Positions 5,401-43,630 of a stretch of 64,000 nucleotides of DNA are shown here, in pieces (the first letter of the stretch is position 1; every line of letters begins with the position of its first letter). A model generated the notes under the pieces. The model had not been told where the DNA came from. It searched no databases and worked only from the letters and a program-made list of their open reading frames with translations. A program made the translations under genes and the position numbers. The stretch lies in NCBI GenBank assembly GCA_047495785.1, contig JBLDXI010000024.1, positions 1,922,001 through 1,986,000 on the forward strand, read 5' to 3'. The DNA is from Lepidodermella squamata. Its lineage: Eukaryota > Animalia > Gastrotricha.

Positions 5401-6454
5401 GTTTGCTAGGTCATTTTTCTCGAAAAATTATTGTCGTGAGCTGAGATATAATAAACTATACCTACGAGTTTATTATCTGCGCGTGGGCAGTGATGTTCGA
5501 ATAACGCAGAGGTACACAGAAACAACATTCACCGCTTGGTGTGTTCTTACGTCGAACAATGGCACACTTTGTTTCAAGAAAAAACACAGGTGCGCATGAG
5601 TTATTGCGCGAACAATGCCGCGAGTTGTCGAAATTTAGTAGCTGGGCTTCTAGGGTTGTTGTTATTTTGACAGCATCGGCCGTCTGTAATGTTAATACGG
5701 CGAACGCCCTTGTCGCTTGCAATAATTATAACGATAATAATTGCTGGATAAAACTTGACTTTTCAAACACGTTTTCAACAATACTTTAAAAACAGTTGAT
5801 CATCAATGAAATGCCAATGAAAATTGTGATTTTTGATATTACTGAATAAAATAACATGAATTATCAAGTTAATCTGGCCTTTATATCCAATTTTTTTGCA
5901 TTTTATAAATAATTGTTCTCATTTCGCTGAAAATTCCAGAATTATTATCATCAATTAATTGCCTTTTATAATTTAGTCGATTTTATCATCACCACCTTCA
6001 ATTATCAGCATAATAAGATAACTACCCTGCAACTGATAAAACCCTCGCCCTCTCCCTCTCCGTCTCTTACGTGCCCCATCAATATGATGAGCATGGATAC
6101 ATCTTACTAGCACGCGCCTCTTGTTCCATAGTATTATTAGAGAGTTATTTTGTGTATTTTGTTATTTGGAAAGAGGACAACAATAAAGATTTTTATTTAT
6201 TTTATTTAAGAGTATTGAATATGGCCAGCTGCCCATTCTCATAGGTCGGCCAGTGTAACACCCGGGTCACTGCTGTTATGAAGAGCACGCGTCACATTAT
6301 TGAAGGGTCGCACGCCGCTTGTGCCGAACTTATTTTCCCCAATTTTTATTACTACAAGCCGTGTTGTCTGCCCATACATAACGTCATTATCTGAATGAGC
6401 TGTATTTCTTGGCAGTGTATTTTCGGAAATATCAAGTATTAACGTAAGAGCTAC

Positions 6455-9400
6455 ATGGCAAGTCACAATGTGAGTTCGATAAATCAGTGAATTTATAGAC
6501 AAATTTCTTTTTCCTTTTTGTTCTTCAGCTTCACTTTAATCGGCCGATCCAAGATTACCCCGATTTTGTACCCACTGTAATTTCACTATGTGCGGGGTGT
6601 GGGAAGCATGGTATTCCTCCTCAGCAGAAAATAATTCTCGAATGTGAAAATATTGTCTGTCGACAATGTATGGCTGAAATGCTTGAAAGAGGCGGCCCTT
6701 CCGCTGTTAAATTCATGTGTTTCGTGTGCTGTAAACCGCATGTTAAACCCGGTGCTATGCCACAATCCCAAGAGAAAGAGCAGGCTTATTTTGGAGGTAT
6801 ACATATTTTTTGTATAAATTATTATTATGGCAACTGATTTATGTATTTTATCGTAGGTTATGCGGGTGATTTGGATAAATTAAATTCGCGGAAAAATCCG
6901 CCGCAGCAGCAGTATCACGGTGACGTGCGTGAACAGTTCAATCAGCATGACACCCGTTACCATCAACAAGCCAATTTACCCCGCTCTGATCACCGCAACT
7001 TCAATGGCCAGTACCGCGGAGATGGGCGCTATAACAACGACAGGCAATGGCACAATGGCCAGGGATCTGCGAAGCCCTATAACAATCAAAAAGTAAGTCC
7101 CTGCGACCACAATTATTTGAAAATTATTTATTATATAGTATTATTAATTTGATCATCTTGTTAATATCTACTGTGCTTTAGTATGACATTCGCCACGATA
7201 ACCGTGAAAAAATGGATAGGCGCAAAGGCGTAAATGACTGCAATCAACAACAGGTACAATTGATCTCTATACCCAACCATAAGATTTTGTTTCTATTTTT
7301 AAAAGAATGAGGGCGATTTGCGAAATACGATCAGCGATCGAAATCAACCACGCGAAAACATGGCTGAGGATGTGTCGCCCAAAGTCAAAAGTGAGCAATG
7401 CGACGGCAAGAAAAATGGCGAAAAAAATCGAGAAAAAATGGCGGAAAACTCTAAATCGAAAAACAAAAAATCTAAGGAAGATGAGAAATTGCGAGAAAAG
7501 TCAGGCGCCGACGAGAAAAATCCGTGAGTAAACCTTGATCTTTTCTATACCAATATCAATGAAATTATTTTAGAGAATTCAAGGGCAAGTCGAAAATGGT
7601 TGATAAGGAGACACAATTTCGTTTGTGATGTTTTCCTGCCTGTATAATCATTTTATTGAAATTATCCCGAAAACAGGTGCGAAAGAAGAAAAGAATCGAC
7701 AAAACCAAAACCACCATATCCAAGAGGAGAACGACAAGCGTTTATCAGAAATGAATCTGGTGAGTGCTTAGCCGTTAATCTTATTATCAAAGTTAAAATT
7801 CGCTTTTAAATTATTTAGGCGCTTGAGGTGCTTCGAAGCGCATTGATGAAAAAGGATAGGGAGATGGAAAATTTGAGAAACGAGGTGACAAAACTTCAAC
7901 CGTGAGTTTGTCTTGCGACAAATTAAATTCAAAAAATGATTCACTAATTATTTTAGTGTCCCGATGATTGGTATTGATATCGGAACAACCAAGTCGTGTG
8001 TTGCCGTTTTCGAAAATGGCTCTGGTAATTTTGAAATTTTTCGAAAAATTCCCGCGATTAATTCTCAATCTTAAGTTCGAACTATTTGCAACGAACGCAA
8101 CGAGCAGATTATTAGCAGTTGTGTCCATTTTAACAACCCAAAAGTGGACGATGGAAGTGATCCGGTTGAAATCGGCACGAAAAAACTGGATGCTAACTCA
8201 ATTCCCTGCATTAAACGCATCGCTGGAATTGCTTATGAAACGCTGATTTCCGAGAGCATTTTCTTACCGTGCGAGGTAACGGGCGAAGACGGGCACAGCG
8301 AGCCAGTTTTCATCATCCCGAATCGCAAAAATGAACCGCCGTTTCAGCGCGTGGAAATTTTTGCGTTGCTGATCGAAAAATTGAAGCGCATGGCTGAGGC
8401 TGAATTTCAGGGCCGCAAGGTCACTCGAGCTGTAATTTCAATCCCGGCCGGGTTCGGTTATTTTCAGCGACTCGAAATTTTGGACGCGGCGGCTATTGCT
8501 GGACTCGCCGAAGTTCGGCTTGTCAGTGATACGGAGGCTCTCGTTGAAACGTTCAAATTTCGAAGTGGCGATGAGAAAATTAACAAGAAATTGCTGCTTG
8601 TTCAAATTGGCGGTGGTGTGACGGAAGTTTCGATGGTTCGCCTGGCTGAAGGTAGTAAACAAAACATTGCTGATATCTCGTCGTATTGGTTCGGCGGTGA
8701 GGATATCGACTTCGAATTGATGTCTATCATGTTATCGAAACTGCAAAACATCGTTAAAGCGAACGTGTACCAAACTGAGGTGAAATGCAATTTGAAAGCG
8801 CAATGCCAGCGGGTTAAGGAGGAACTCTCAAGTGGCGTTAAACAATCGGAAATATCAGTTTCCGTCGATGGGAGTAAAGTCGTGCTGCCGCTAACCCGAG
8901 AGGAATTTGAAGGTATCCTTTCGGAAAAATTAGTACCAAATCTGCTGTCGGCTATCAAGTCAACGATCGAAGGAAGAGGGGAGCCCGAAGAAATCGTTCT
9001 GGCTGGTGGATGTACTCGGATTCCGATTATTGTCGACCATCTGAAGGGTCAGTATCCTAATGCTACGTTGTGTCGTAGCATCAATTGCGACCTAGCGGTG
9101 GCCCATGGAGCCGGTAAGTTCGTGCGATCTTTAATTAAAAAAATTAAAGAATTATGAAGCATTTCCCCTTCAAGTGATAATAAAGAACCGAATCTGAAGG
9201 TGTAAAAATTTCCGCTACCGAATTTGAGATTGGAGTGCTAAATTGAATTACCCCCACTTGCGCAACTGCCACTTGCGCAACTTTTCTAGTTATTTTTTTA
9301 GTTTTAAGCAGTTTTCATCAAGACTGAAGTAGATACATTATAAAAGTAATAATATTTTGGAAATACAACTATTGAAGCGTCATTTGGTGTATGTCATTTG

Positions 9401-11502
9401 ATGATCCATTATTTGGTCATAAGCCTTTAGATGTTAAATTACAAAAAAACAAAATGCCGGCTTTATTTATTTCAAAATGTTCAGCGCATAGCTAGAGTGG
9501 ATATACATAGAAGCAAAGAAGCAAATTATGTAGAAAAGCTTGTAGAAGAGCCGATCAACGATGTTAACTATTTGTAATCAGTAATCAATGATGACATACT
9601 GTCTAGGCAAGCGAGTAAATCGTTGGTGCTATTTTCGCTGTAGCCGAAATGGCGTACAACTTGCTGGATATGTTACTCCACCCGTTCGTATTTCGGCAAA
9701 ACACGCTCAACTTTTAGACCTCGATCGATTTTACGCATTTTCGCGGCAGAGGCGATTTCTTTGTTGAAATGTTTGTTGAAATGTGGAAATGTTGGAAGCT
9801 TGCGAGTATCATCTGCTGACCACGCGTTATTATAGCCACCCGTATAACATACACCAAATGACGCTTCAATAGTTGCATTTCCAAAATATTATTACTTTTA
9901 TAATGTATCTACTTCAGTCTTGATGAAAACTGCTGAAAAAGTGGTAGTTGCGCAAGTGGCAGTTGCGCAAGTGGGGGATAACCGCTAAATTTTCCAATAA
10001 TTCGGCGACTTCGGCTTTTCCCCTAACTTCATCGATTATAATATTACCGTAGGATTTTCCACATAGCCACCTCGCAATCTAAGGCAGGGGGAATAATTTT
10101 CGATGTTGGCTTCTTATAATGCTGATATCGGAAAAATTACTGATTTTTAATATCGATACTCAGCTCTAAAGGCTGAAGTACAGCGTGTCCCAGAAGTTGC
10201 GCAACTATTTTTTGATTTGCCGACTTTTTGCAGCAAATTCAACTAATTTTATTGATTTGAACATACTTGGTGAAATTCCATCTTTTATCCGCGATTTAAC
10301 CGAAAAAATGAAAAATTTACTAAATTTACTAAATCGGTAAGTTACCGAGGAAAACCCGGAATACGTCGATGGTAATTGGTTCGGTAATTTTCGGTATTTT
10401 ACCCGGTTGGACCAAATATCTTCAGACTTTAACCGGGTTTTACGGCAACTCTGGATGAAATTCCTTACCGGGCTACTAACATTTCAACCTCAAAATTTGG
10501 AAAATTTCGAAAAATAATTGTAGGAGAACCGTTAATTTGTGATGTTTTCGAACCGAATTGACCCCTTAGCCCTGGGCTACTGTTAGGATGGGCTACTATT
10601 GGAACAAATACGGTATTTTATTATCAGGCCCACATCCACCTGAGAATAACATGAGAGAAGCATCGCTTTAAAAATCAATTTATTTTTCCATTTTTCGTAG
10701 CTTTGATTGCTAGCAAGGTGGATATTTTTGAGCCATCGATGCCCATCAAAATGCTCATCGAATTCTTCAGCCATGCCACGGGCAAGTTACTCAACGCGAT
10801 TGAGTTGAAAAAATACGTGAAACTGCCGATCAACATTCGCGAATACTTGCCTGATTTCGGCGAGGAAAAAATAGTTATCAAGGTGGGCCTTGTTTTTTTT
10901 ATAAATTCAATAATTTCATCTGTTGAAGATTCACCAAAGCGACGATCAAATCGCTCGGTTAATCGTACCTCGTTGCGCTCGTTCGTCGAAATTGCGATTG
11001 GAAATAAAAGTCGATAAAAATGGCCTGATCACATCTGGCTATGTCGCCGAGCCCTTGCAAGAAATCGAAATTACAGAAATTTTAACAAGGAGAGATTTCC
11101 GAAAAGCCGTTGCTAGGCTCGAAAAGTAGGATCAGTTTTAAATTGTTATTACCTTAAATTCCCTGGTTTGCTCTTCAGTTTTCGAGACGAAGTTGATAAT
11201 CGGCGATTGCAAAAAGAAGCTTGCAACAAGTTGGACAAATTGATTTTCTTCGCTGAGAATGTTACAAGTCAGTGTGATTCCGGGCCTGATAACGTCATGT
11301 CGAGCCTGAAACAAAAGAGTCGCGATTGGACCAAGTGGTTTGATTCTAATCCAGTTAGTTTTCATTTCATAAAATCACAGTAAACAATTTTTAATCTTAA
11401 CAATTCTAGAATGCTTCGATCTCCGAGTTGGATGAAAAGCGATTTTTGATCGAAAAAGAACTTCGTCAAGCTGGAATTACTATTCCTGCTGAATCGTGTT
11501 GA
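6455..11502 (+). CDS. RING finger - low-complexity/coiled-coil - divergent Hsp70 fusion protein (Hsp70 cluster gene 1)
   Basis: Phase-compatible exons: 6455-6469 (MASHN), 6529-6796 (CAGC..ILECENIVCRQC..CFVCCKPH), 6857-7092, 7182-7253, 7306-7523, 7574-7620, 7677-7759, 7819-7901, 7957-8024 (IGIDIGTTKSCVA), ~8075-9113 (VISIPAGF, GGEDID, LAGGCTRIP, AVAHGA), then short exons ~10700-11502. Confidence 0.8.
9245..9983. mobile_element. Non-autonomous DNA transposon (MULE-like) in the intron of Hsp70 gene 1
   Basis: ~140-bp terminal inverted repeats beginning CCCCCACTTGCGCAACTGCCACTTGCGCAACT; direct repeat GCTAAATT at 9237-9244 and 9984-9991; internal minus-strand remnant (GYNNAW...PTF..F...E) resembling a MULE transposase C-terminus, with a stop codon. 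Confidence 0.8.
10181..10420 (+). mobile_element. Tc1/mariner-like terminal fragment (dispersed repeat, copy 1)
   Basis: Starts TA-CAGCGTGTCCCAGAAGTT; homologous in reverse orientation to 21255-21473. Confidence 0.6.
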
Positions 11503-11588
11503 TTTAAAAAAAAAGATGAATACAATTCCGCGTATGTGTCACTTATATTTCTGTTTAATAGGTTTGATTTATCTATCCTATATTTCAA

Positions 11589-14500
11589 ATGGCTTTGGGA
11601 CGAGCACCCGCGCCTGCCGTTGGCATCGATCTCGGCACGACTTATTCGTGTGTTGCAGTCGTGAAAAACGGCATCGGTGAGCCTTTTATCAAGGCATAAC
11701 TTGGAAAAATAGCTAAATTAATTTTTCAGTTCAAACCATCCACAACGGCCAGGGCAATTACGTAACGCCAAGCTGGGTCTCGTTCACTGATGAAGAGATT
11801 CTAGTCGGAGAGCCTGCTCGAATCGCCGCGGCTGGTAATAGCAAAAACACGGTTTTCAACGCGAAACGGCTAATCGGTCGATTTTACAACGAATGGGAAG
11901 CGGAATACAAAACTCTGTTACCGAACTGGCCGTTCAAAGTCGTGAAAATCGGTGATAAACCGTTCTTTGAGGTGGCCCAAAAAGGCCGAGTGAAGCATGT
12001 CTCTCCTCAAGAGATTTCGAGTTACGTCCTGAAAGAGCTGAAAAAATCCGCCGAGGATTTCCTGCAACAACCTGTGAAAAACGCTGTCATTTCAGTCCCA
12101 GCGAATTTCGACTACGCTCAGCGAAAAGCCACGGAAGAAGCGGCAAAATTAGCCGGGTTCAATGTTTTAAGGCTTTGTTCCGAGCCAGCTATGGCTGGGA
12201 TTATGCATGACCCCCTTCAAAATATCTACCACAAGAAAACTTTACTTGTTTTCGATTGCGGTGGTGGAACGACTGATGTTGCTATTCTATCGATTTCTCA
12301 AGGTGGGACCTATGAAATTATGGCTACGGCTGGTAACATGAGCCTGGGAGGCGAGAACATCGTCGATCGCTTACTCAATCATTTTCTTGGTAAATTGAAG
12401 GAAGAAACCGGTGTCGATTACAGTAAGAATGAAGAGGCTGTTCGAAGGCTGAAACGTACCTGCGAGGAGGCGAAATGTCAGCTCTCATTCGCTGAGGCCT
12501 ATACAGTTTGCTTTGATTATCAATGCGAGCCGCGGAGCTGGAAGCTGACCCGGGCTCGATTCGACGCGATGAATGCTGATTTATTCGAAAAGATGTTGGT
12601 ACCGGTTGCTGAGGCGATTCGGGTGGCTGGTTTGGATAAATCGAAGATAGATGAAGTGCTGTTAGCGGGCGGAACGTCTAGAATTTTAGACGTTCAAAAT
12701 CGTTTGGCCAGATACTTCGAAGGAAAGCCGCTGCGGAAGTCTGTCAATCCGGAGCAAGCCATAGCCCAAGGAGCAGGTAAATTTTTGTCACTACCTCAGC
12801 GAGAATATTATTCGAATTTTTCCCTTCAAAAACCAATTTCAAAAAACCATTTAACAGCCCATTTTTGTAAAAATAAGAATTTTGGACTCTGAGAATTCTC
12901 ATTTTTAGCTCAGTTTGAGCTTAAAATATTTACAAAAATTACAGAAAATTAAAAAATTTCCTCAGAATACAAAAATTAGAAATTTCATAAGTGGAGTTTG
13001 CCAATTTTGCTAAATTTCTTTTAACAGAAAATTGGGGTTAGCGAAGAACTAGTCGATATGTGCCTCAAGACTTAATTTGTTTATGAGATTTATCGGCAAT
13101 TTTGGCTTTTGACTGATTTTATTCCGGAAAATGCCAACCACATTTCTAATTGATTTTGAACTGTGACTCATTTTTCGTCGAATCCCTCCATTGGGATAAA
13201 TATTGGGACGGAATGAGCCAAACAAACTTATTTGACAATTCCCCATTTTTTCAGCAATCATGGCTGCTGTTCTTTCTGGCGATAAATCGTCATCGTTGAG
13301 CGGGCGTTACCTGTGTGAGATTGCCCCGCTTTCCCTCGGCATTCGAACTAGCCACAACGAAGTATCAGTCGTAGTCCCTCGAAACACGAAACTGCCGTTC
13401 AGCAAAACTCAAACTTTCTACACAGCAGATGATGATCAGACGATGATTAATTTCGACATCTATGAAGGCGAGCGATTTTTAAGTGTTGATTGCGCTGATG
13501 GTCACCTTGGCGTTATCGAGTTGAAAGGCTTCCGTAAGGCTCGTCGAGGTCATGTCTCATTTCAAGTAACTTTCAATGTGAGTGCCAGCGGTGTTATGGA
13601 AGTCTCGGCTTTCGAGCCTGTCAGCAAAATAATGGCTACTTTGCAACTTGTCAGCCGCAACAGACAGCCTCAAGGCATTGCTGCGATTATTGAAAATGCT
13701 CAAAAGTTGGTGAGAATTTTCCATTTGAAAAGTCTGAATGAAATGGCGAGCGTCGCAAAAATCTGAGTGAATGTCAACATTTATTGAGCGTTTATCCCTC
13801 AGCCACCCTTTCTTTATTAACAACCGAGAGAAGAGAGAATCACATTTTATCATTTTTTAGTGTTGCCGAATAGGTATAGAAATTTTTTTTAGCTTTCTTA
13901 GCTTCGCCGCGTTTTTTCGGCGGCTCGGTTTCGGCCCCAGTTTGTTCGGACAGTTCAGGCGGTTGGTGAGCCAAAGCCGAAACTGTCTTTGCCGGCCGAC
14001 CACGTTTTCGCTTTTTTCGCTTTTGTAAGGCGAGCTTCGCCTGGAGCTGTCTCCACCTTGAGCTGCTGGGCCATGCCACGTGAATGACAGCAGGTGTGTT
14101 CTTTCGCGTAGGTAGAGCATGAACAAGAGAAGACATTTTTCTTGAAAGTTTCGCATTCAGCCGGGCATTGAAAGTCGATTTTCTTCATGACGTGGAAGAT
14201 TTTGCGGGTGAAATCAGAAAAACGATCGGAATCGATCAAATCTATTTGCTTGATCTCGCGGTAATTATTCGCGACTTCTTGGTCATATCAGTTACGACAA
14301 AGTAAAAGACGTAGCTGAGTAAGGAGCTGTTTTTGGCCTCATACAGATCTACGTCCTTGTCCTGCCACAACACGCCATCAGCCCAGCGGCCAACGGGTAT
14401 CGTTAATTTCTGAATTAACTGCAATTTTTAGCAATTGATGTTGCCCGGGTAGCGATCGTGGGACCATTGAGGCAACATAACAGACATGACAATGCGGATA

Positions 14501-15537
14501 TATTCGGTTATCGGCAGGCGCTGTAAAATCCTGTTTTATGATCTCATTTATCGCCTCGATTTCATTATTTGTGGATGGTAAGCTGTTAGCCGTTGGTAAT
14601 TTTCTCGTCTTGAAGTTCTATCCAAGCCGTCCACATCTTGCTCGACTTTTTAATGTCTCTTTGCTCTCAAATTACTCGAATTTTTTCGATAACGTACTCC
14701 AATAGACCAAGCCTCATGATTATGCGGTTTTCCGCGGCCACCACAGGTGCATAGTAATAGCGTCGGTGTCGTAGGCCTTGAGGTCGAGGGGCCATTTCTT
14801 CGCTAAGATACATACTTGGAGTAGGATTTTCTTGATGTCCTCTGCCTCCTCTTGCGTTTTGCACCGTTTTTCTAAGGTTCACAACTCCTGTTTTCGCTTA
14901 TTTCCAAAATCGTCAGTATCAGAAGATTCAGAGTTCGATTCAGAAGAATTGCTACTACTACTATCTGCCTAGGGGTTCGACTCAACCTCAGCCTCGTCAG
15001 CTTCTTCAAAGGAACGAAAGCTTTCATCCGTTGTAAAATTATCAAATTTTGAGCGCAAATTTTTTTATTACCGTTGCTACTTATTACCTTTAATATTTCT
15101 ACAGTCACGCCTGAAGGAATAGAGATTAAAGAGATATAAGAATTAGATAATAGATATTACTGTTCCTCCAAAGTTGCGCCGCTCACTCAGATTCTTGCGA
15201 CGCTCGCTCAGCCGCCCAAAAAATATTAAGGAGGAATTTTTATTTGAATGCGCAATTTTTCAGGAATGTCTACGTCGATTCAGTGAAAAAAGAGCGAGTT
15301 CGTGAGTTGCGCGAATTCGAAGATCTAGTCTACGAGCGGAAGCATCAAGAAGAAGACGAAAAAGTGCCGAATGCGAAGGTGCTCATAGCCTGCGAGCGGG
15401 CGCTGGACTGGATCAGGCAACGGGGCGATACCATTTCTATGGGCTGTATCCGCAATCGCCGTTCTCAGTTCGAAGAATTCTACGGCCTTCGCCGAGCCAA
15501 CCTAGTCAACGCTATGCGAGCTGTTAATTTGAATTGA
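11589..15537 (+). CDS. Divergent cytosolic-type Hsp70 (cluster gene 2), short lid, no EEVD
   Basis: Exons 11589-11677 (AVGIDLGTTYSCVA), 11730-12777 (TPSWVSFT, NAKRLIGR, FDCGGGTTDV, LGGEN, LAGGTSRI), ~13255-13709 (substrate-binding domain), ~15264-15537. Confidence 0.92.
13746..15207 (-). mobile_element. Degenerate Mutator/MULE element with SWIM zinc finger in the last intron of Hsp70 gene 2
   Basis: 25-bp inverted repeats GCGAGCGTCGCAA(A/G)AATCTGAGTGA at 13746-13770 and 15183-15207; minus-strand remnants LPSTNNEIEAINEIIK (MULE catalytic-Glu region) and FSCSCSTYAKEHTCCH (SWIM); stops and frameshifts. Confidence 0.8.
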
Positions 15538-15647
15538 AATCCCAAGCTCCTAACTACAAGTTGTTCGAACTGTGTTAAATCATGCCTTGTACTCAAATTT
15601 GATTGTTTTACATCTGAAATCCTGCTTTTTATTTTAGTCAATTAATC

Positions 15648-18359: not shown

Positions 18360-18495
18360 CGACTCTAAGTCTAAAACTACTGGTCATATGATTGAACGGA
18401 TGCTTGATCACATTTTATGTTTGAAAACTCCGCCTACAAGCTTAGCAAATTTTGTCCAAATTTGTTTTATTATTTTAGGTATTTTACATTTCAAA

Positions 18496-21400
18496 ATGGA
18501 CACTTCTATTCCGATGATTACCAGTCCTCTCAGATCGCCGGATGAAAAATATGGTTCATTGGGAGCGTCATCTGCTAACCAGGTAGATCTTTGTTAAACA
18601 AAAATCTCCCTCAATATCAGCGGAGTTTTTAAATATAATTGAAATTCAGTTTTGATTATATTTCGTACAACAATTCCCATAGAGGGCTGTGATCGAAACG
18701 AGCAAACATTTTACCCGGCTTATTCCACGTTATTCCACGCTATTCCTTGATTAACTGGTGAAACATTCTCAATTAGTGAAATTTTGCTTCAAAAGAGGTG
18801 AGCGAAAGAAGCAATAACTTACATGAGCAACGAGAAAATCGGAAAATCAAGTGTGTCACTTTTAGATTTATCACGCGTTACACCCCCTTTCATCACGCGT
18901 TACTTCTTCATAAAGAATCACGCGTAGCAACACGCGTTACGTCCTTGTGACTAATACCACAGTGGTATTAGTCACAAGCTTTGTAGTTTTAGCGGCGCGT
19001 TTCACAGTAATTTTCGTCGCATGGGCGCTTCGCTTTTTTGAAGCTTTTCCGGCGATTTTTGGCGTTTCTTCGACATGAGCGATTTTTGCTGACGATGAAG
19101 GAACACAGGCGGCGAAGCCATTCATAAGATCTGTGAAGCCATCCTTGCCATCATCACCACCTATCGGCGGAAGAGAATCCGCGCTTCCGCTAGCCCCGGC
19201 GCCAGGCGCGTCGACGTGGGGCATCGAATACTGGCGCATCTCGGCTGTAATATAAAAAACAGAATTTTAAATGAGGGCCGAAAATTCTCAGTAATATAAA
19301 ATGAAAATCTAAAAAATTAAATACCTGGATCGACGTTTCCGCTGGCCAGATCGACGGCATTGAACATGTTTGTTGTAGCGGCGTCATAGTCGCTTAGGTT
19401 TTGGCGCTGGTTGTATTATGCCCATGTTCGAGCGAAATAGCCGAAATAAAATCCGACGTTCCTGCTTTGCAGCACGGCTGTTGCGATCGTGATCAGGGTC
19501 AAGGCGGTATCGATTGCTCATAAGCACACGAGGCTCGATGGGGGCGCTTATTAGACGCCGAAGACATGTCGTTATAAGTTGATAAAATGAGGAGATCTTG
19601 AAATAAATAAGACAGATTTTAGAATCGAAGTGAATTGATACGAATAATAGCCTTGCAAATGGCATGCGGCGAGTTTTCAATAATAGGTTTTTTCATAGAA
19701 AACGGGACATTATTTACAAGGCTAGTTTTGGTGTTTCTTTTGAGGGCGAATAACGATATGGAAATGTCGAAACGGCGGAATATTTCTCCGAGATGTTCGG
19801 CCGAAAGGCGAATGTAGCACCTTTTCTCGCTACAAAATTCAAAAATTTTACTCGATATCGCACATCGTCACCTACCTTTCTAAAATGTCCAGCTGAGCCA
19901 ACTTACCAACGGGAACAACGCAATGACGGGCTACGACCTTGAGCTGATTTAGCATGGGCTTTCAGCTGCATCGCGGTTGAGCTGGGTTTCGAGTGCTAGA
20001 GCCACTTGATTGGTCAGAAATAGCATCTCATTTCGCCGATCGAAAATAGCAAATGGATCGAACAGAACACGAACGAGCCGCACTTGTTATTGACAAAAAT
20101 CAGGAGTCAATAAAAAAGTAGGCATAATGAGCAAAGTGTGTGAACATTTCTGAAAAGGTGTGATGAATTACCGATGACCTTGCAGTATAGGGTGTAGGTT
20201 TTTTCCCGTATGGTTTTGGTCTGCAAATTAAAAAATGAGTGTAAATGTGTCAAAAATATTGTCAAAATTGTGTGCAATATGGCGTTGAATTTTCAAAATC
20301 AACAAAATCAACAGAAATGCCGGCGTAGATTGAATGTTAAATATGCCTTGTGGATGACGTCACCATCCACCTTGACCACGTCCTTAGCATTTGGCGAGGG
20401 TCTTGCAATTTCGTTATGGAATTGGCGAACCTTCTCGATGACTTAGCGTGATACTGAATTCGAAGATTGCGCTTTATTGCAGCCTATCCGGTAATGTAAT
20501 GTCAGGGCCGTCACGATTTGAGGGAGTGTTGAGTTCTGCCATGGGAAACGGAGAATCCTTGAGGGTTACATTTTTAGCAACATCGATTTCGATAAAAATG
20601 TTGATTCCAAATTCCACGATCAAATTTGTTGAATTTATTGAGTTTTTTTCGTTTAGTCTGGAAGAGTTGCAGCTTACAAAGTGGCAGCTACCTGCCTAGC
20701 CTGTCAAATGACCCTCGGTCGTGTTTTGCCGTGCTGCAGCGCCAAAACTGGCCTCTGCGGCGCCTGCCAATCGCAGACCGACCCAACCACCGGCTACGTC
20801 ATCTGCCTGATGTGTGGGCTCAAGTACAACGCCGGCGATTATTCGCTGGTGACATCGCCCATGCGCCTTCGCCGTGTCGAGCCGATCTCTCCAGACGACA
20901 CGTTTTCGGCGCCGAAAGCGTCGCCTGAGCTTACGTCACCCCGCAAAAAGGTCGCAGGGGCTGTTGACAACGAAACTAGTCTGGAATATTTGACGAGCAA
21001 AAATGTTGAATTGAGAGCAGCCATTGCTTGCCTAGCGCTGGTAAGAAATTTTATTCTCATTGACAATTATTGTCGAGTCTTACAGCGTATCCCAAAACCC
21101 AAAAGTAACACAAGCAAAGAAAATTCGCGGAAAAGGGTTCAGAAACTCTAAAATTTGAGACGAAGCCACATCTCATGGCCAGAAAAATTGTAGAAAAATT
21201 CAAAAAATCACGAGAATAGTAATCAAGTATGTCACTGATGGGATTAGAAAAGTCAGGAAAATTTGGTCCAACCGGGTAAAATACCAAAAAATCCCGAACC
21301 AATTACCATCGGGGTTTTCCGGGTTTTCCCCGGTAAATTTTTTATTTCTTCGGTTAAATCGCGGATAAAAGATAAGATATTCTCTCAGTAGGCTTAATTT

Positions 21401-24400
21401 ATAGAAATTGGTTGAATTTCCTACAAAATGCTGCCAAATTGAAAAATAGTTGCGAAACTTCTGGGACACGCTGTATAGTGGAGCCAAATTGTGATTCGCT
21501 AAAAATGCCTTTGCCAAATTTTCGGGAATTTCTCGATTTATTAAAAAATGATGTAATATAATAAACATTAATTCTTTGTTTTTTTATCAATGCAAGACCT
21601 TTGAGAACACGGTCTCATCGGGGTTTTAATTATTCGAAATTGGCCATTTTTAACGGTCTGCGTCAAGTTTTGAAATGCTGAGAGATTTTCTTTAACCCTC
21701 CAGCGCCCACGGCGTGTATACACGCGTTTTTCACTTTTAATACCCAACAAATTCAGATTTTATCAATCAGCCTTTTCTTTTCACCTGATAATTTATTTCA
21801 CTATGATTGCGATGCAAAATATCGACCTCAAAAAATTTTTGTTGAAACACCTGTGCCCTCTGTCGACGCAAAGTTGGCAAGTGCCTAATCGCTGGTTTAC
21901 ACGCTTATGGTGCGTCTTAACACGCAAAGTTGGCGTCTTAACACGCCACAATGGTCACACAGCTAGTGCGTGTTCACACGCGAACAATGTTGCGTCACAA
22001 CACGCCGAAGACATTAACTAGGGCAAAAATAGCTATAAAACGCGAGCTGAATGCATTGAAAAAAATCAGAGTTTCATCGATACTTAGTTTTTGAGATATT
22101 CTGATCTTTTTTTGGCAATTCAACTAACATCTCCACGGCTTCTGGCGCAAGGGCACAAGGTGAACCTTATGAATACCGCGCTGGGTATCACTACCGAAAA
22201 CAATCAAATCGATTGCGCAAGCGGCTTGATTTCGACATCGCGCGCTACCTTGCCAATTCAATCACTAATCAATGAAAACCTGAACTATTCATTTTTATAA
22301 TTTTTAATTTAATTTTTTTAATTTGCAAGCTGAGTGATTGATTATTGTTGATTTTAGCGAAGATCGTTGAAATTCCTGCGACTTCCGAATAAAAATGGTC
22401 AAAATCATGAATAAAATTAGCATATGGGCGTGTTTAGACGCCTCAATTTTTGCGTGTCAAGACGCCTCATTAGCGTGTCGAGACGTCTTAGTAATTTTTT
22501 TCGCAACTTGCGGGTATAGACGTCGAGTTTTTGAAAAAGCGGGTTTACGCGTCCAAGTCGGCGTGTAAACCCGCCAAATCACCGAAAAACGCCTTTGCGT
22601 GTATACGCGCACATAGACACGCGCATCCGTGGGCGCTGGAGGGTTAAATCTGTTTATTCAGTTGTAATTTATTCTCGCCTAGGAAAAGCAAGTGCTGTCG
22701 AACTCGCTACTTCGACGGGAAAATGTTATCGGATATTTGAGCGAGCAGCTGCGAAGTGTTTCCCCGAGGTATTGTTTCACTGATAATTTTCACGTTGTTT
22801 TCACAAAATTGATCGGTTTTTCAGCGAGGAGAGCCAAGGAAAGCGATCGCCTGTTTTGAGCCACACGAGAAAATCCCCGATGATGGAATCTAAAGCCTCA
22901 AACACGACCTCAAGTGGTGATGATCGCAGGCTGTTCGAACAGAAAATTGAGGAGCTAAACCGATGCAAAAAAGTTATTCTTTAGCAATAATTTCATTTAA
23001 AAATTGATCGCAATTTGATTAAATTAAATTTTTAAAATATTTTTATTCCTGCTCTATTTGACTTTTTTCAGAGGATCGAATCTCTTACTCAGGAGCTGAA
23101 TTCGAAAGAAGCTGAGTTGTCTGCCATGAGGGAAATTACAGCTTCCCCAAAATCTCCCAAATCGTAGGTCAATTCTAGTTTGATTTAGCTTCGATTTAAA
23201 TTAAATTTTAGCTCAATCGTTCTTGGAATCGACATTGGAACTGCGAAATCAAGCATTGCCTACCTAACTGAATCTGGTGAAATTGAGACAATCGCAACAA
23301 TTCCAAGCTCTATCAATCTCTCTTCGTCAAATTTATTCGCAGCTCAAGACGAAAATTGCGAAAATTCCGACCCGGCTGATCTGATTTCATGCGTAAAACG
23401 CTTGTTAAGCCTCAATTACGACGACGCTTTGAAACAAGCGAAACGTCTATCGTGGCAATTCAGCATTTCTGATGGCAAATCGCTGGAAATCTCAGCGCCC
23501 TGCCGGCCGGGTGAAGTTTTCTCACCCCTTGAATTGTACGCAATTCTACTCGGGAAACTGAAAAATTTGGCCGAAATGCATGGATCGATCAAGATTTCTG
23601 ATGCCGTAATTGTCGTACCGGCTAATTTCGGCGACGGCCAGCGACAGGCTGTGATTGACGCTGCGTCGATCGTTGGCCTTAATGTCGTTAAATTGATCAG
23701 TGAAACGAATGCAGTTTTCAACTGCGCTCTATCGAAAATGAAAGATTCGCTGCCGAGTCAAGTTTTGGTCGTTGCTATGGGCGCCGGCGTGACTGAAGCA
23801 TCGTTTTTCGAGCTTAATCAAACGTTGCAAACACACGAAATGGCGAGCAGTTTCGCTATTTCAACCGGTGGTGAAGATATTGACAGCCTTTTAATGCAAT
23901 GCTGCCGATCTGAGTGGAAGCAGTATTTTGCCGATCCGGAAATTGAACGCGAAATTTTGTCGCAAATGAAAATGAAGTGTCAACAGGCGAAGAAGGAACT
24001 CACAGTGCCTGGGGTGAAACAGGTTGAAATTCAACTGGCCCTGCGTAATAAGTTGAGTCTAGTGCTGCCGTTGACGAAAAATCGCTTCGATGGACTGATT
24101 TCCGGCTTTGTCATGCCGGAATTTAAAAAGCTGATTGCGAAGGCTGTTAACGGCCGATCGCCGCAGTTGGTCATACTATCGGGTGGTTCGATGCAGATTC
24201 CGATATTAGCGCATGCGGTCCAGGGCCTGTTTCCGGATGCTAAGGTCACTCAAAGTCTCAATTTTATTGAAGCTGTTGCGCACGGAGCAGGTAATTTTTA
24301 TGGATTTGAATAATATTTGTACCGGTAAAATTAGGATTCCAGATTCCAACCTAATTTTAAGCGTCCTTGCTCTAAATTTTCTGGTTTTTTTGCAATTTCG

Positions 24401-27400
24401 GACTTGGCTAACCTAACTACCTAGCCAATCTGGTACCTATATATAAGCTTTTTCAAAGGCCGATATCGGAAAAATCGATACTTGGAATCGACATCGGCTG
24501 AAGCCTTAAATTCAATATAACGGCTATTATACGTGTCACAGACAGAGGATCACAGCTTCGTCACGTGCACGTTTAGTCACGTGCTTCGTCACGTCACGTA
24601 TGCACGTTTAGCGGTGCACTCTTAAATCTGAAACTACAATTTGCTGTATAAAAAAAGCGTAAGCGTAAATAGAAAAGTCCACTTTTTTGTAACGAGAAAT
24701 GGTCACGTTACACTTTACCGGTTTTTGCTTCGATTTATGGCTTTTTTTCCACTGCCAAAAAACGTTAAAATTGCCGCATCATTCGTTACGGTTTATTTGT
24801 AACTACATTTTTTTTCCTTCGCACTAGCCGCACTTCTTGCTAAGCGTGGTCGAAATTTCTATCGAAATCATACAAGTCAGCGAAATGAATGAAATTATGT
24901 GACTTTGACTTGATGATGTTTGATGTTCAAGGGGATGTTTGGGGTATGTTTTTGAGCAAGATTATATGAGCAATGTCGATAACTTTCAAGAGCATCATTC
25001 ATAGGATCACCGGTGTATACATCAGCACACATGAAAGCTATGTAGAAAAACAAGTCAAATCATCATCATCAATATTGTCATAAGATCACATCAGCACAGT
25101 GAAAGCTTGATTAGTTTTCGCGAGTACAGATCCTTTCGAGCTGTGGCGATGAATGCTGGACAAAGCACTTCTTTGAACAGAACAACAGCTCGAACGCTGG
25201 CTCCAACCAGCTTGGCCGGCCTCGAAGCGTTTGAAGCACAGGCGGCACCTATTGCGGTCGACGAGGATTGGCGTCAAAGGCGATTCGTTTTCGAGCAGCT
25301 CTTTGCTATCTATAATCGGAAAAAATTATGAGAAAAATGTTTCATTTTTTTATTATCCTTATTATGCGACAACTTCCGAACGAGAAGAACTGCTCGCTTC
25401 GTTCCCCGCGCTTTGACGCAGTTTGCGCATGCGTTTGACCCTCATGTTCGTCGAAATCGACGTCATTAACCGACGTAAAACATGTCAGCAAGAAGCCATG
25501 AAAACGGTTAGGAAAGTGCTTAGGAAAGTTACTCTGTTATGGAAAAATTTACGTTATTTCGAGCTGTTACGCCCTGTAACGGCAAAAATTGTCGTGCTAA
25601 ATTGAATAGTGTGGTAGTAGATAACCGCTGGGTATGTCGATGTGGGGCGGTGATATTTTATTTATAATAGCAGGGGCAATGTGTAGAAAGTGGGTTTAGG
25701 GTATTGGGGTTCAAGATGTTGTCAGACGGATGCTTAAAATGGACTGTAACAGACAGAGGAAAAAGTTTTGAGTATTTTCCAATGATTTTTATTCCGAATT
25801 TCCTTAATCAGAAATCAGTCAGGGCTCATCAAACTGATAAACAAAACATAAATTGAATACGTAGGATCGATTATACAGCGAAATATGGAGGGCCCCAAGC
25901 ATGTATAGAGCACAGTCAAGAGAAAACGCTGTCACAGACAGAGAACGCGATTTGCCACAGACAGAGGTTCCAAATTAAATTTTTTGAAGTAGGTTTCAAC
26001 TTGAACAATACAATCTAAAGGAGTAGAAACGGTTGAAATAGTCAACAATAAAGTAGTTGAATACGGTGAAACTTCATATCTGGAATATTACATTCAGAGC
26101 AAATGAAGTTTTTACCACCCTTGCGGGAGCATAAAGCAATGCCAAACAGAGCACCGAACACACTGGCCCCACTCTTGTCCTGCCTTCGATTTCTTCTTCC
26201 ATTCGGTCCACGAGGTGTCGCATGCGTAACACCTACTTTGCAGGTAATTTAGTGGCTCGTCATCACAGGATAACGCATCTTCTTCATCGGAAGAAATCGG
26301 ATACTGAGCACCAGTTATTGCGGCTCGCTTCGAAGATCCAGCTCTTGAGATTGGCGCCGGCCGTTTGAAAGCGCTTTTCGGTCGTTCAATGACGGTACTT
26401 GACAAGGCGTTCGAGAAGCTAAAACTCAGTTCATCATTGTCGATTGATGACATCGACGCATACTGCCTTCGCCTCGTCGATGAGAAATTCAAGCCTTTTC
26501 GAATTGTTAGAATTTATATTCTATTAAATTGATATTTTAATTTTTTCAATTTGATGAACGCAAAATTTCTCATTTTTTTCCTCAATTTTAAATTATTTAA
26601 TTTTCGGAATGGCTGCTCGTACATATATATGTACGAGATTTTTGCTGCTAGCGATTTTTGCTAGTCGTACATATATTTCAAAAATATTTCTGCTGAACTT
26701 AGAAATTAAATGGATTAATCAATTTTGATCGCAAATGTTCCAAATTTTAACCATATGTGCATCGAGGCGTGACCAACCTCCCCTCAAAGTTTGGCATGCA
26801 TAGGGTGAATACCCATTATTAGCCAATCTGAAACCCGAAATTACCCGAAGTCGGTAATGTCCGGAACCATAACCGATGGGCGGGTAAAAGTTTGCAGGTG
26901 TGTGGAACCCTGTTAGAGGCATTTGCCCTCAAAAAATGAACTCGCCAGGATTGAAATTGAGTAATTGGCTGAAATTCCAAGTTTTCATTCGAATATATGT
27001 ACGAGCAGCCAAAATCTCGTACATATCATATGTACGAGCAGCAAAAATCTCGTACATATATATGTACGACCAGAGTCACTCTTTAATTTTTTTCGGAATG
27101 TTTCCTTTATTTCGATTTTTATAATAATTTGATTTTTATGAATTTTTAGCACTTCAACCTCAGCTATCACTGCCGTTTGCTGTGATGCCACTCGAGCTGG
27201 ACTGCTTCCTCAAGCATACAGACCCGGAGAGCAAAAAGAGCGCGTGCTGGCGAATCGCAGAATGTGTCACCCTGCCCAGTTCCTTCAAATCAATCCACTC
27301 GTGGCCTATCGATAGCTTGGAAGAAAACGCGTCTAGTTTCACCCTGACCCTACGCCAGAATAAGCGCTGCATCGGCTCGGTTCATCTTAAGGATGGCGAG

Positions 27401-27742
27401 CCGGGTGATGTCCAGATTCATTTAGACATTGATGAAAATGGAATTTTCACCGATATTCGCGTTGAAATTAGCAATCAACCCGGTTCGACGGTTTTCATCG
27501 ATAAAGACTACGATGGCTTGACCAAAAATCAATGCAATCGCGTTGCTGGTCGTCTAAATCGGTTTGCTATTTTTCACTGAACTATAAAATTCTGAATTTT
27601 TTGGAATTTTGCCAGATTGAGTTCGCCGAAACGTGTTGAGGTAAAGGCTGAGACTGGAGCGTTTAAGCTCAAGAAGCTGATTGCGGCCCTGGCCGACGAT
27701 TCGACGTTTAAAGTGAACCCAACTTCCCCACTCGGAGGTTAA
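18496..27742 (+). CDS. RING-like finger - coiled-coil - degenerate Hsp70 fusion protein (Hsp70 cluster gene 4)
   Basis: Phase-compatible exons: 18496-18582, 20657-21040 (CLAC..LPCC..CGAC..CLMC), 22683-22768, 22825-22972, 23072-23163, 23212-24290 (IVLGIDIGTAKS, VVPANF, GGEDID, LSGGSMQIP, AVAHGA), 27150-27561, 27616-27742; a heptad pattern continues across the 21040/22683 junction. Confidence 0.78.
18700..20500. other. ~2 kb insertion in intron 1 of gene 4 with decayed spliced ORFs; probable transposon relic
   Basis: Short tandem motifs TATTCCACG and TCACGCGT at 18720-18935; minus-strand exon-like pieces 18937-19246 and 19325-19597 separated by a GT-AG intron but containing stops. Confidence 0.4.
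21255..21473 (-). mobile_element. Tc1/mariner-like terminal fragment (dispersed repeat, copy 2)
   Basis: Reverse complement of 10181-10420; ends CTTCTGGGACACGCTG-TA. Confidence 0.6.
21696..22643. mobile_element. Non-autonomous piggyBac-type element
   Basis: Perfect 17-bp TIR CCCTCCAGCGCCCACGG; TTAA target duplication at 21692-21695 and 22644-22647. Confidence 0.9.
24530..26500 (-). mobile_element. Decayed DNA transposon (pogo/DDE-like) with a PHD-finger remnant in a gene 4 intron
   Basis: ORF 26112..26492 contains CYAC...WGQCVRCSVWH (PHD-like, as found at pogo-type transposase C-termini); ACAGACAGAG motif repeated at ~24537, 25749, 25934 and 25957. Confidence 0.5.
26605..27081. mobile_element. 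MULE-type MITE
   Basis: Inverted arms containing TCGTACATATATATGTACGA hairpins; flanking 9-bp direct repeat TTTAATTTT at 26596-26604 and 27082-27090. Confidence 0.7.
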
Positions 27743-31661: not shown

Positions 31662-32294
31662 TTTCGCCGTTATGAATAATTATGATAAAATTAAGATAGC
31701 ACTAAAATGAAATAGTGGAAATGTGTTAGGTGACCTCAGCTTTTTATACATAAGAAATGACCTTCGGCCGCAGCAATTGTCCGCCCTCTTATCTTTATTG
31801 GGGCGGTTTTTTGCATCTTAATAGTTTCAATACATTCAGCGATGAGGTAAAAGCAATAACACTACGCAGTAGTTTTGTTCTCTATGGCGCCATTTGTTTG
31901 CAGAAGGGTTCCACGCGATGTCCACGTGAAGGGGTTAATCAGTCCGTACTGCGGACAAAGGGTGACCGCTATCGTGCGCTACAGCACTGCCGTGGTTGGG
32001 TTCTCTTTTGGGCTCCATTTTTTGATAAAAACTGCACAGAAAGATTAATTCGCCCTGAATCCAAACAGCGCCGTTCCGTTCGTCTATATTTGCCTAGTGA
32101 CTAATGAACGCGAATCCATTGATGAACACCACGCTGTGAAACAAAATGATGGGATCATCAACCATTTGTTGCCCCCAATGTTCTGTGGTGGATTAAGCAT
32201 ATACTCATGAGTGAAACCGATTAATCGCTTTTATTATACAAAAAATTAATTCTCGATAGAAAATTAACATATTCGATACAACGTGGATATAGTT

Positions 32295-42832: not shown

Positions 42833-42964
42833 GAAAATATCTGAATGCTGAATGTGAATGTGTGTATTGGTTCAAAATTAAATAGTTTATCATACGACAT
42901 ACATAGTCTTCCTTTTCAATTCCTGATATTCATAAAGTGTACATCGTACATGAGATAAAGAATA

Positions 42965-43599: not shown

Positions 43600-43630
43600 A
43601 TAACAGTTTAAAGGCAAAATCAGTCGATAA

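What the first reader, a model, noticed from the sequence alone, without database searches (positions are those of the whole stretch)
6455..27742. RING-finger-Hsp70 fusion genes bracketing a pair of divergent Hsp70s: candidate undescribed ubiquitin ligase/chaperone system
Seen in sequence: both outer genes of the four-gene Hsp70 cluster splice in frame from an N-terminal RING-type exon through coiled-coil/low-complexity exons into an Hsp70 domain. Gene 1 exon 6529-6796 is absent from the ORF track and reads CAGC-x14-C(EN)IVCRQC-x16-CFVC. Gene 4 exon 20657-21040 reads CLAC-x9-CC-x6-CGAC-x12-CLMC. Every splice junction from these exons to the Hsp70 GIDIGT motif is phase-compatible. Established: RING plus coiled coil is the TRIM-type E3 layout, and canonical cytosolic Hsp70 recruits the E3 CHIP in trans through EEVD, which all four genes lack. 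Inference: these proteins may join an E3 ligase to an Hsp70-fold recognition module and work with the two adjacent RING-less Hsp70s, for example in proteostasis or intracellular pathogen defence. I know of no characterised RING-Hsp70 protein.
Basis: partly seen in the sequence, partly recalled or inferred. Interest (0 to 1): 0.92.

Follow-up and report, generated by a model that had tools for sequence, protein, structure and literature searches.

The report
RING-like zinc finger fused to Hsp70
Both outer genes of this four-gene Hsp70 cluster, plus a third gene 815 kb away, encode a RING-like zinc finger and a short coiled coil fused to a degenerate Hsp70, a domain combination I could not find described elsewhere and whose ubiquitin-ligase activity remains untested.

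Summary
Four Hsp70 genes lie on the + strand at 6455-27742. All splice sites in my four gene models are GT-AG and in phase.

- **Transcripts.** RNA contigs join gene 1's ATG exon, RING exon and the next five exons at the predicted junctions. Other RNA contigs join its Hsp70 exons.
- **Third paralogue.** An intact gene (g5, same contig, about 815 kb upstream) has the same layout. It aligns with gene 4 from the zinc finger to the C-terminus. Gene 4's fusion therefore rests on conserved architecture, not on RNA.
- **RING homology.** The three zinc fingers share seven invariant Cys. Their profile matches independently chosen RING domains of this genome (hhalign 88%, E 3e-6) but not PHD (3%) or B-box (1%). 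It is a variant: no His ligand, below Pfam cut-offs, no B-box, so not TRIM.
- **Degenerate ATPase.** The three fused Hsp70 domains keep D10 and K71 but have lost D199. The two inner genes keep an almost complete catalytic set.
- **Selection.** Variants in gene 1 are 25 synonymous to 9 nonsynonymous.
- **Distribution.** No relative closer than generic Hsp70 turned up in public protein sets.
- **Not shown.** E3 activity is untested. A functional link to the inner pair is not supported, because g5 stands alone.

The parts
6455..11502 (+). Gene 1 (g1), 14 exons, 924 aa: 6455-6469, 6529-6796, 6857-7092, 7182-7253, 7306-7523, 7574-7620, 7677-7759, 7819-7901, 7957-8024, 8076-9113, 10701-10882, 10929-11125, 11179-11353, 11410-11502
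   Evidence: All exons are GT-AG and in frame. Nine junctions are seen in RNA contigs. Listed variants are 25 synonymous to 9 nonsynonymous.
6589..6729 (+). g1 RING-like zinc finger core (residues 26-72), with Asn where RING-HC has the His ligand
   Evidence: Sub-threshold RING-clan Pfam hits: zf-C3HC4_4 E 0.0067, zf-RING_5 E 0.011. Atlas features score 0.92 to RING clusters. The family profile matches RINGs.
6857..7620 (+). g1 low-complexity linker (residues about 95-300, rich in K, N, R, Q, D, E), four exons
   Evidence: Composition. Exons are joined in RNA contigs.
7677..7901 (+). g1 exons carrying the heptad helix (residues 305-340) directly before the Hsp70 domain
   Evidence: Crude heptad score. 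This stretch aligns with the equivalent stretch of g4.
7957..9113 (+). g1 Hsp70 nucleotide-binding domain; D10 and K71 kept, D199 to Q, T204 to V, D206 to E
   Evidence: Pfam HSP70 1.6e-41. Own Hsp70 HMM aligns end to end to residues 343-914. Site table.
10701..11502 (+). g1 substrate-binding-domain-like and helical lid region; ends ...AESC, no EEVD
   Evidence: hmmsearch alignment. Exons are joined in X3 RNA contigs.
11589..15537 (+). Gene 2 (g2), 619 aa, RING-less Hsp70: 11589-11676, 11730-12776, 13255-13705, 15264-15537
   Evidence: Catalytic residues almost all intact. About 45% identical to any public Hsp70.
15648..18359 (+). Gene 3 (g3), 621 aa, tandem duplicate of g2 (86% identity): 15648-15735, 15791-16837, 17576-18032, 18086-18359
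20541..27742 (+). Gene 4 (g4), 8 exons, 783 aa: 20541-20564, 20657-21040, 22683-22768, 22825-22972, 23072-23163, 23212-24290, 27150-27561, 27616-27742
   Evidence: All exons are GT-AG and in frame. No RNA evidence. g4 aligns with paralogue g5 from residue 16 to 765, E 1e-58.
20693..20815 (+). g4 RING-like zinc finger core (residues 21-61), eight Cys with a CC pair at ligand positions 3 and 4
   Evidence: No Pfam RING hit on its own. Atlas features score 0.86 to RING-type clusters.
22825..23163 (+). g4 exons carrying the heptad helix (residues 206-236) before the Hsp70 domain
23212..24290 (+). g4 Hsp70 nucleotide-binding domain; D199 to A, G202 to A, T204 to V, D206 to E, D366 to I
27150..27742 (+). 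g4 short, very divergent substrate-binding-domain-like C-terminus
   Evidence: Weak match to the Hsp70 HMM, positions 475-553, i-E 3e-4. No Pfam hit.
21691..22648 (.). piggyBac-like MITE (perfect 22-nt inverted ends, TTAA at each end) that inflates g4 intron 2

Best explanation
g1 and g4, together with a third gene g5 on the same contig about 815 kb upstream, form a lineage-specific family.

**Shown**
- Each protein has a short first exon, an N-terminal RING-superfamily zinc finger of an unusual type (seven invariant Cys, no His), a disordered linker, and a 30-36 residue heptad helix.
- A complete Hsp70-like body (nucleotide-binding domain, substrate-binding-like domain, lid) follows.
- g1 is transcribed and spliced as one unit through the RING, linker and first coiled-coil exons.
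- The Hsp70 part of g1 is under purifying selection.
- All three Hsp70 domains have lost Asp199 and carry Glu for Asp206.

**Inferred**
- The proteins dimerise through the helix.
- The RING recruits an E2.
- The ATPase-impaired Hsp70 body acts as the receptor. It would hold either unfolded clients through its substrate-binding domain, or canonical Hsp70s and co-chaperones through its nucleotide-binding domain. This would be a built-in version of the CHIP-Hsp70 partnership.

I put the architecture at about 0.9 and the E3 mechanism at about 0.45.
For: - **RNA junctions** for g1.
- **Gene models:** GT-AG, in-frame models for g1-g4. g5 is an intact 862-aa gene with the same exon logic; two of its donors are GC.
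- **Full-length homology:** g5 aligns with g4 over g5 19-803 and g4 16-765.
- **Shared intron:** a phase-2 intron lies 4-5 codons before GIDIG in all three genes.
- **Zinc finger conservation:** seven invariant Cys plus V, L and two P.
- **RING homology, biased set:** the profile's only further hits in the 121-Mb genome are five domains that each pass at least one Pfam RING-family cut-off; hhalign against them gives 96.6%.
- **RING homology, independent set:** against 12 RINGs chosen by Pfam alone hhalign gives 88.4%, E 2.8e-6. Controls: PHD 3.2%, B-box 0.9%, reversed profile 14%.
- **Single-sequence Pfam:** g5 finger zf-C3HC4_3 E 0.001; g1 finger zf-C3HC4_4 E 0.0067.
- **Tree:** g1+g4+g5 form a clade at 96/94.
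- **Catalytic sites:** table.
- **Selection:** 25 synonymous to 9 nonsynonymous variants.
Against: - No Pfam RING model reaches its curated cut-off for any of the three fingers.
- The His ligand is Asn in g1. In g4 and g5 a second Cys directly follows ligand 3, which is an unusual geometry.
- The residues that usually touch the E2 are atypical: Gly, Ala or Val before Cys2, and no Pro after Cys7.
- AlphaFold2 single-sequence models were of low confidence (pLDDT 53 and 63), and Foldseek on them found nothing.
- Docking the g1 RING to a UBE2L3-like E2 gave no answer.
- Three g1 junctions between the coiled-coil exons and the large Hsp70 exon were not among the printed rows.
- g4 and g5 have no RNA evidence.
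- The g1/g4/g5 clade joins long branches.
- No orthologue was found in any other organism, so conservation beyond this genome is unknown.
Confidence: 0.5

Rival explanations
1. The fusion is real, but the zinc finger is a decayed RING without ligase activity. It would serve as a zinc-stabilised interaction or dimerisation module. The proteins would then be specialised non-cycling Hsp70-like scaffolds or co-chaperones, comparable in principle to Ssz1 or Hsp110, which use a degenerate Hsp70 fold to bind or regulate canonical Hsp70s.
For: - The His ligand is missing and all Pfam scores are below cut-off.
- The E2-contact positions are atypical.
- Catalytic Asp199 is lost in all three genes, and the adenosine motif has decayed in g5.
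- The E2 docking job gave no support, although that result carries no weight.
Against: - Seven Cys, the LP motif and the Pro before Cys7 are invariant across paralogues that are only about 27-32% identical overall. That points to a maintained RING-like fold.
- Many active RINGs deviate in single ligands, and U-boxes need no zinc at all (established knowledge).
Confidence: 0.3
2. One reading: the four clustered genes form one functional system, in which the two RING-Hsp70s act on or with the two inner RING-less Hsp70s.
For: - The four genes lie on one strand in 21 kb.
- g2 and g3 keep a nearly complete catalytic set, while g1 and g4 do not, which would fit a division of labour.
- Both kinds are lineage-specific and divergent.
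Against: - The third family member g5 has no Hsp70 neighbour within the 10 kb read.
- g2/g3 sit inside the cytosolic Hsp70 group, apart from g1/g4/g5.
- The introns shared by g1-g4 at the end of the nucleotide-binding domain suggest the cluster may simply reflect old tandem duplication.
- No co-expression or binding data exist.
Confidence: 0.15
3. Annotation artefact: the zinc-finger exons are separate small genes or untranslated exons, and the Hsp70 genes start at internal ATGs (for example MMESK in g4 exon 4).
For: - g4 and g5 have no RNA evidence.
- g4's zinc-finger exon could in principle read through its donor to a stop at 21151.
- g4 intron 2 is 1.6 kb long.
Against: - RNA contigs join g1's RING exon through five further exons in the Hsp70 reading frame.
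- The same order of parts, and the same phase-2 intron before the Hsp70 domain, recur in three paralogues that diverged to about 27-32% identity.
- g4's long intron is explained by transposon insertions.
Confidence: 0.05

Closest known systems
CHIP (STUB1) working with Hsp70/Hsc70
   Same: An E2-recruiting RING-type fold (a U-box in CHIP) is coupled through a coiled-coil dimer to an Hsp70 that holds the client. The proposed mechanism is the same triage logic.
   Different: CHIP binds Hsp70 in trans through TPR repeats and the EEVD tail. Here the two parts are one polypeptide, and there is no TPR and no EEVD. The finger is a zinc RING variant rather than a U-box. The Hsp70 part has lost Asp199, so it is probably not a cycling chaperone.
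TRIM / RBCC E3 ligases
   Same: An N-terminal RING is followed by a coiled coil and a C-terminal recognition domain. This genome also holds large arrays of RING exons.
   Different: No B-box is present. The coiled coil is about 30-36 residues rather than about 100 or more. The C-terminal domain is Hsp70-like, which is not a known TRIM C-terminal domain as far as I know or could find.
Atypical Hsp70s with impaired ATPase (Ssz1, Hsp110/Sse1, HSPA12-14)
   Same: The Hsp70 fold is kept while catalytic residues are degenerate and there is no EEVD. These proteins act as partners or regulators rather than as cycling chaperones (established knowledge).
   Different: None of these carries an N-terminal RING and coiled coil. 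g1, g4 and g5 group with none of the named Hsp70s in my small tree. Their relation to HSPA12-14 was not tested.
C4C4 RING variants such as that of CNOT4
   Same: g4 and g5 have eight Cys and no His, with overall spacing within the RING range.
   Different: In g4 and g5 the fourth Cys directly follows the third, and g1 has Asn at the His position. I recalled this resemblance from memory and did not test it against those proteins.

Membership tests
RING finger superfamily (Pfam clan of zf-C3HC4 and relatives) | Eight metal ligands spaced C-x2-C-x(9-39)-C-x(1-3)-H-x(2-3)-C-x2-C-x(4-48)-C-x2-C | tested here: not met
   g1 fits the spacing only if Asn stands for His, giving 7 of 8 ligands. g4 and g5 have eight Cys, but ligand 4 directly follows ligand 3. 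Seven Cys are invariant in all three.
RING finger superfamily (Pfam clan of zf-C3HC4 and relatives) | Score above a Pfam RING model's curated cut-off | tested here: not met
   Best scores: g5 zf-C3HC4_3 19.3 bits against a cut-off of 27 (E 0.001); g1 zf-C3HC4_4 17 bits against 30 (E 0.0067); g4 has no RING hit.
RING finger superfamily (Pfam clan of zf-C3HC4 and relatives) | Profile-level homology to bona fide RING domains, specific against other cross-brace or Cys-rich fingers | tested here: met
   hhalign of the three-member profile against 12 RINGs chosen by Pfam alone gives 88.4%, E 2.8e-6, over the full length. Controls: PHD 3.2%, B-box 0.9%, reversed profile 14%. Against the five RINGs the profile itself found it gives 96.6%, but that set is biased.
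RING finger superfamily (Pfam clan of zf-C3HC4 and relatives) | Cross-brace fold binding two zinc ions | tested here: inconclusive
   AlphaFold2 single-sequence models had pLDDT 53.5 and 62.8. Foldseek on them found nothing at E<=0.001.
RING finger superfamily (Pfam clan of zf-C3HC4 and relatives) | E2 binding and ubiquitin-ligase activity | tested here: inconclusive
   Docking to this genome's UBE2L3-like E2 returned 'no answer' with score 0.01. Activity itself needs a bench assay.
TRIM / RBCC | B-box zinc finger between the RING and the coiled coil | tested here: not met
   No zf-B_box hit in the N-terminal exons. The profile scores 0.9% against this genome's B-boxes. The linker of g1 is low-complexity.
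TRIM / RBCC | Long antiparallel coiled coil | tested here: inconclusive
   My own crude heptad score found only one stretch of 31-36 residues in g1 and one in g4. No dedicated coiled-coil predictor was available.
Hsp70 (PF00012) | Pfam HSP70 score above cut-off over the nucleotide-binding domain | tested here: met
   E-values: g1 1.6e-41, g2 1.2e-74, g3 8.1e-86, g4 3.3e-38. g5 scores 190 bits against my own Hsp70 HMM.
Hsp70 (PF00012) | Catalytic residues of the ATPase (Hsc70 numbering: D10, K71, E175, D199, T204, D206) | tested here: not met
   In g1, g4 and g5, D199 is Q, A and S; D206 is E in all three; T204 is V in g1 and g4. D10 and K71 are kept. g2 and g3 keep all six.
Hsp70 (PF00012) | Substrate-binding domain and lid following the nucleotide-binding domain | tested here: met
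   g1 and g5 align end to end to an Hsp70 HMM (positions 6-607 and 6-608). g4 aligns only over positions 475-553 of that part, weakly.
Cytosolic Hsp70 that recruits CHIP or Hop | C-terminal EEVD | tested here: not met
   C-termini: g1 ...AESC, g2 ...VNLN, g3 ...VKLQ, g4 ...PLGG, g5 ...PGSL.

The most novel reading that the evidence does not exclude
These genes define an undescribed class of ubiquitin ligase. An Hsp70-derived, ATPase-dead module serves as the built-in substrate or chaperone receptor of a dimeric RING E3. It would be a natural cis-fusion of the CHIP-Hsp70 triage pair, diversified into at least three paralogues in a poorly sampled animal lineage.
Probability: 0.35. Interest if true: 0.8.

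Novelty: new variant of a known kind. Interest (0 to 1): 0.62.

Why it matters
Hsp70 and RING or U-box ligases are known to cooperate only in trans, with CHIP as the textbook case. A natural protein that welds a RING-type finger and a dimerising helix to an Hsp70 body would show that this partnership can be hard-wired.

It would also offer a compact model for how chaperone-type recognition is coupled to ubiquitination. The shared loss of catalytic Asp199 suggests the Hsp70 fold has been repurposed as a binding module. That bears on the open question of what non-cycling Hsp70-like proteins do.

Three paralogues keep the same layout at about 27-32% identity, and the Hsp70 part of g1 is under purifying selection. 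Both argue that the fusion is functional rather than accidental.

The limits are clear. Activity is untested, the organism is unknown to me, and no orthologue was found elsewhere.

Tried and rejected
- **AlphaFold2 and Foldseek.** Single-sequence models of the two zinc-finger exons had pLDDT 53.5 and 62.8. Foldseek against the PDB found no match at E<=0.001, so the rows are meaningless.
- **Complex prediction.** g1 RING exon plus 2 Zn with the UBE2L3-like E2 (L011:233-688:-) returned 'no answer', score 0.01. This is neither for nor against binding.
- **PDB sequence search.** Nothing significant for either finger.
- **The search of protein representatives with the g1 nucleotide-binding domain.** The best hits were only 29-33% identical, and the top ones were tandem-Hsp70 fusions. 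None of the 150 hits has a Cys-rich N-terminus.
- **RING-pattern scan.** No RING-like pattern occurs in any of the 270 Hsp70 proteins fetched.
- **The search for homologous proteins.** The g4 finger exon found nothing. The g2 domain found only generic Hsp70s at about 45%; the top hit was a Mesorhabditis tandem fragment. A neighbouring DUF268 gene, tried to place the organism, gave at best 36-42% identity, so the lineage is poorly sampled.
- **Metagenome scans.** The g1 RING exon and the g1 Hsp70 domain both found nothing.
- **Nematode SL1 leader.** Absent from the genome, so my first guess of a nematode was dropped.
- **Heat-shock elements.** One site at 5929-5941, which is not more than chance gives.
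- **Paper searches.** Five searches turned up no RING-Hsp70 protein.
- The spliced full-length proteins have no reference, so I did not send them to the database, Pfam or folding tools. They were analysed only in scripts.
Full report
**What is in the window.** The window comes from a 121-Mb eukaryotic assembly (G000, contig C24). GC content is about 42%, and introns are mostly 50-90 nt with pyrimidine-rich acceptors. Pfam finds strong Hsp70 matches in six long open frames between 8144 and 24313. I built four gene models on the + strand by hand and by script: g1 (6455-11502, 14 exons, 924 aa), g2 (11589-15537, 619 aa), g3 (15648-18359, 621 aa) and g4 (20541-27742, 8 exons, 783 aa). Every intron is GT-AG and every junction is in phase.

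**The observation.** None of the four proteins ends in EEVD. Shuffling the N-terminal residues of g1 keeps a RING-type spacing in 1 of 20000 trials. For g4, three spaced CxxC pairs survive in 58 of 20000 shuffles.

**Transcript evidence.**
Two of the three runs found behave as RNA, because their contigs skip GT..AG stretches.
- A 790-nt contig of run X1 matches without a single mismatch. It carries 6300-6469, 6529-6796 and 6857-7092, so the 5'UTR, the ATG exon, the RING exon and the first linker exon sit on one molecule.
- Further X1 contigs and loose ends give 7092|7182, 7253|7306, 7523|7574 and 7620|7677. At 7523|7574 four letters lie between the two sides; they have the predicted length and carry two substitutions.
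- X3 contigs give 9113|10701, 10882|10929 and 11353|11410.
- The 47-nt exon 7574-7620 is real. It sets the frame that runs into the Hsp70 domain.
- Three junctions (7759|7819, 7901|7957, 8024|8076) were not among the rows printed, so the chain is not complete on paper.
- No RNA evidence could be gathered for g4.

**A third member settles the architecture.**
- A search of the whole genome with the g1 Hsp70 domain showed g4 as its nearest relative (35%). It also showed another divergent copy on the same contig, about 815 kb upstream. That copy grouped with g1 and g4 in a tree (96/94, long branches).
- Reading the locus (L023, minus strand) gives an intact 862-aa gene, g5. It has a 9-codon first exon, a Cys-rich exon (CSVC-x11-CC-x5-CTKC-x14-CWSC), two coiled-coil exons and a full Hsp70-like body. 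Two of its donors are GC.
- BLASTP aligns g5 with g4 from residue 19 to 803 against 16 to 765 (E 1e-58). With g1 it aligns from the coiled coil to the end.
- In all three genes a phase-2 intron lies 4-5 codons before the GIDIG motif.
- The same order of parts is therefore kept in three paralogues that are only about 27-32% identical. This is the main argument that g4's zinc-finger exon belongs to its Hsp70 gene.
- Its long intron 2 is explained by a 958-bp piggyBac-like MITE and other repeats.

**Is the finger a RING?**
- On their own the fingers are weak. g1 gets zf-C3HC4_4 at E 0.0067 and zf-RING_5 at E 0.011, g5 gets zf-C3HC4_3 at E 0.001, and g4 gets no RING hit. All are below the curated cut-offs. 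Language-model features point to RING clusters (0.92 for g1, 0.86 for g4).
- Aligned together, the three fingers share seven invariant Cys, a Leu before Cys3 (followed by Pro in g4 and g5) and a Pro before Cys7.
- A profile of the three finds only themselves strongly in the genome. Its five next hits (E 0.006-0.19) each pass at least one Pfam RING-family cut-off. hhalign against those five gives 96.6%, but that set was picked by the profile itself.
- I therefore took the 12 best RINGs by Pfam alone, with PHD and B-box sets as controls. The results were RING 88.4% (E 2.8e-6, full length), PHD 3.2%, B-box 0.9%, and the reversed profile against RING 14%.
- In that alignment the Asn of g1 sits exactly on the His ligand.
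- I conclude that the finger belongs to the RING superfamily but is a variant without His. It fails the strict ligand pattern and the Pfam cut-offs. There is no B-box, so these are not TRIM proteins.
- Fold predictions were uninformative. The E2 docking job gave no answer.

**The Hsp70 parts.**
- An HMM built from 36 ordinary Hsp70s aligns end to end with g1 (residues 343-914) and g5 (251-854). With g4 it aligns over the nucleotide-binding domain plus a weak piece of the C-terminal part.
- Mapped on Hsc70 numbering, g1, g4 and g5 keep D10 and K71. They have Q, A and S at D199 and E at D206, and V at T204 in g1 and g4. g5 has also lost most of the adenosine motif.
- g2 and g3 keep all six catalytic residues. 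They fall inside the cytosolic Hsp70 group on a long stem.
- That these residues matter for hydrolysis is established knowledge of Hsc70 enzymology. Their loss here makes a normal ATP-driven cycle unlikely, which is an inference.
- The variants that the runs show in g1 are 25 synonymous to 9 nonsynonymous, and mostly synonymous within the Hsp70 part. The gene is therefore under purifying selection. The printed list of variants was partial.

**Distribution.** Neither the exhaustive representative search, nor the word-indexed searches, nor the metagenome scans found a relative of g1 or g2 closer than generic Hsp70. None of the 270 Hsp70 proteins fetched carries a RING-like pattern. A neighbouring gene also has no close relative in the database. 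The lineage is thus poorly sampled, and absence elsewhere is weak evidence. Five full-text searches found no described RING-Hsp70 protein.

**Mechanism and rivals.**
- My best reading is a dimeric RING-type ligase. Its receptor would be an ATPase-impaired Hsp70 body, a cis version of CHIP with Hsp70. The architecture is shown; the ligase activity and the receptor role are inferred.
- The main rival keeps the fusion but treats the finger as a non-catalytic zinc module on a pseudo-Hsp70 scaffold.
g5 has no Hsp70 neighbour, and g2/g3 belong to another branch.
- The artefact reading, in which the exons are separate genes, is now unlikely.

**Verdict.** It concerns a family of three genes, not two. 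It is a new combination of known domains, with an atypical RING and a degenerate Hsp70. I rate it as a new variant of a known kind, of moderate to high interest, pending a ligase assay and cDNA for g4 and g5.

Noticed in passing
G000:C24:1107800-1110810 (L023:4804-7809, minus strand), outside the window: Third intact RING-like/coiled-coil/Hsp70-like gene (g5, 862 aa). It has two GC-AG introns and no Hsp70 neighbour; it lies between a serine-protease gene and a CUB-like gene.
   Followed up: yes
window 21691-22648: 958-bp element with perfect 22-nt inverted ends and TTAA at both ends (piggyBac-like MITE) inside g4 intron 2. It also has internal inverted repeats.
   Followed up: partly
window 10100-10640: Highly repeated element inside g1 intron 10. 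The DNA run X2 reaches a summed contig depth of about 43,600 here against about 100 on the flanks. A similar sequence seems to lie at about 21160-21560 in g4 intron 2.
   Followed up: no
G000:C24:1807681-1808082 (L009), about 114 kb upstream of the window: Intronless UBE2D-like open frame in which the catalytic Cys position reads Gly (HGDIGIDLF). It may be a retrocopy or a UEV-like dead E2.
   Followed up: no
whole genome, e.g. C25:845000-930000, C1:3224000-3236000, C46:1042000-1190000: Very large arrays of short RING (C3HC4) exons: at least 83 hits at E<1e-6, many in tandem clusters. This suggests a strongly expanded RING or TRIM-like gene family in this genome.
   Followed up: no
window 29873-36451, minus strand: Three tandem copies of a ZIP-type metal transporter gene sharing near-identical C-terminal exons (...GWMVIVGDAIHNVIDGIAIGAAF...).
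   Followed up: no
window 41361-60897: Array of at least nine open frames for secreted Thr/Ser-rich proteins. They share a GGLFLYARPFY...YHLGVGA module and a SEA-like ...ITGFRKGSVISDYIV... module, and their function is unknown.
   Followed up: no
window 3727-5400, minus strand: Two trypsin-like serine protease genes. One carries a long Thr/Pro/Trp-rich repeat (TTWPPWWPTT...).
   Followed up: no
window 20541-20564: The predicted first exon of g4 encodes MGNGESLR, which fits the N-myristoylation pattern MGxxxS. g1 and g5 do not have it.
   Followed up: no
window 13840-14239, 18937-19680, 26112-26492, minus strand: Open frames of 94-126 aa on the opposite strand, inside or between the Hsp70 genes' long introns. 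Some are Lys/Arg-rich and they are possibly transposon remnants.
   Followed up: no
window 38227-39429, minus strand: Intronless 401-aa gene of the DUF268 family (PF03269). Its best public relatives are only 36-42% identical, from EukProt transcriptomes and metagenomes.
   Followed up: partly
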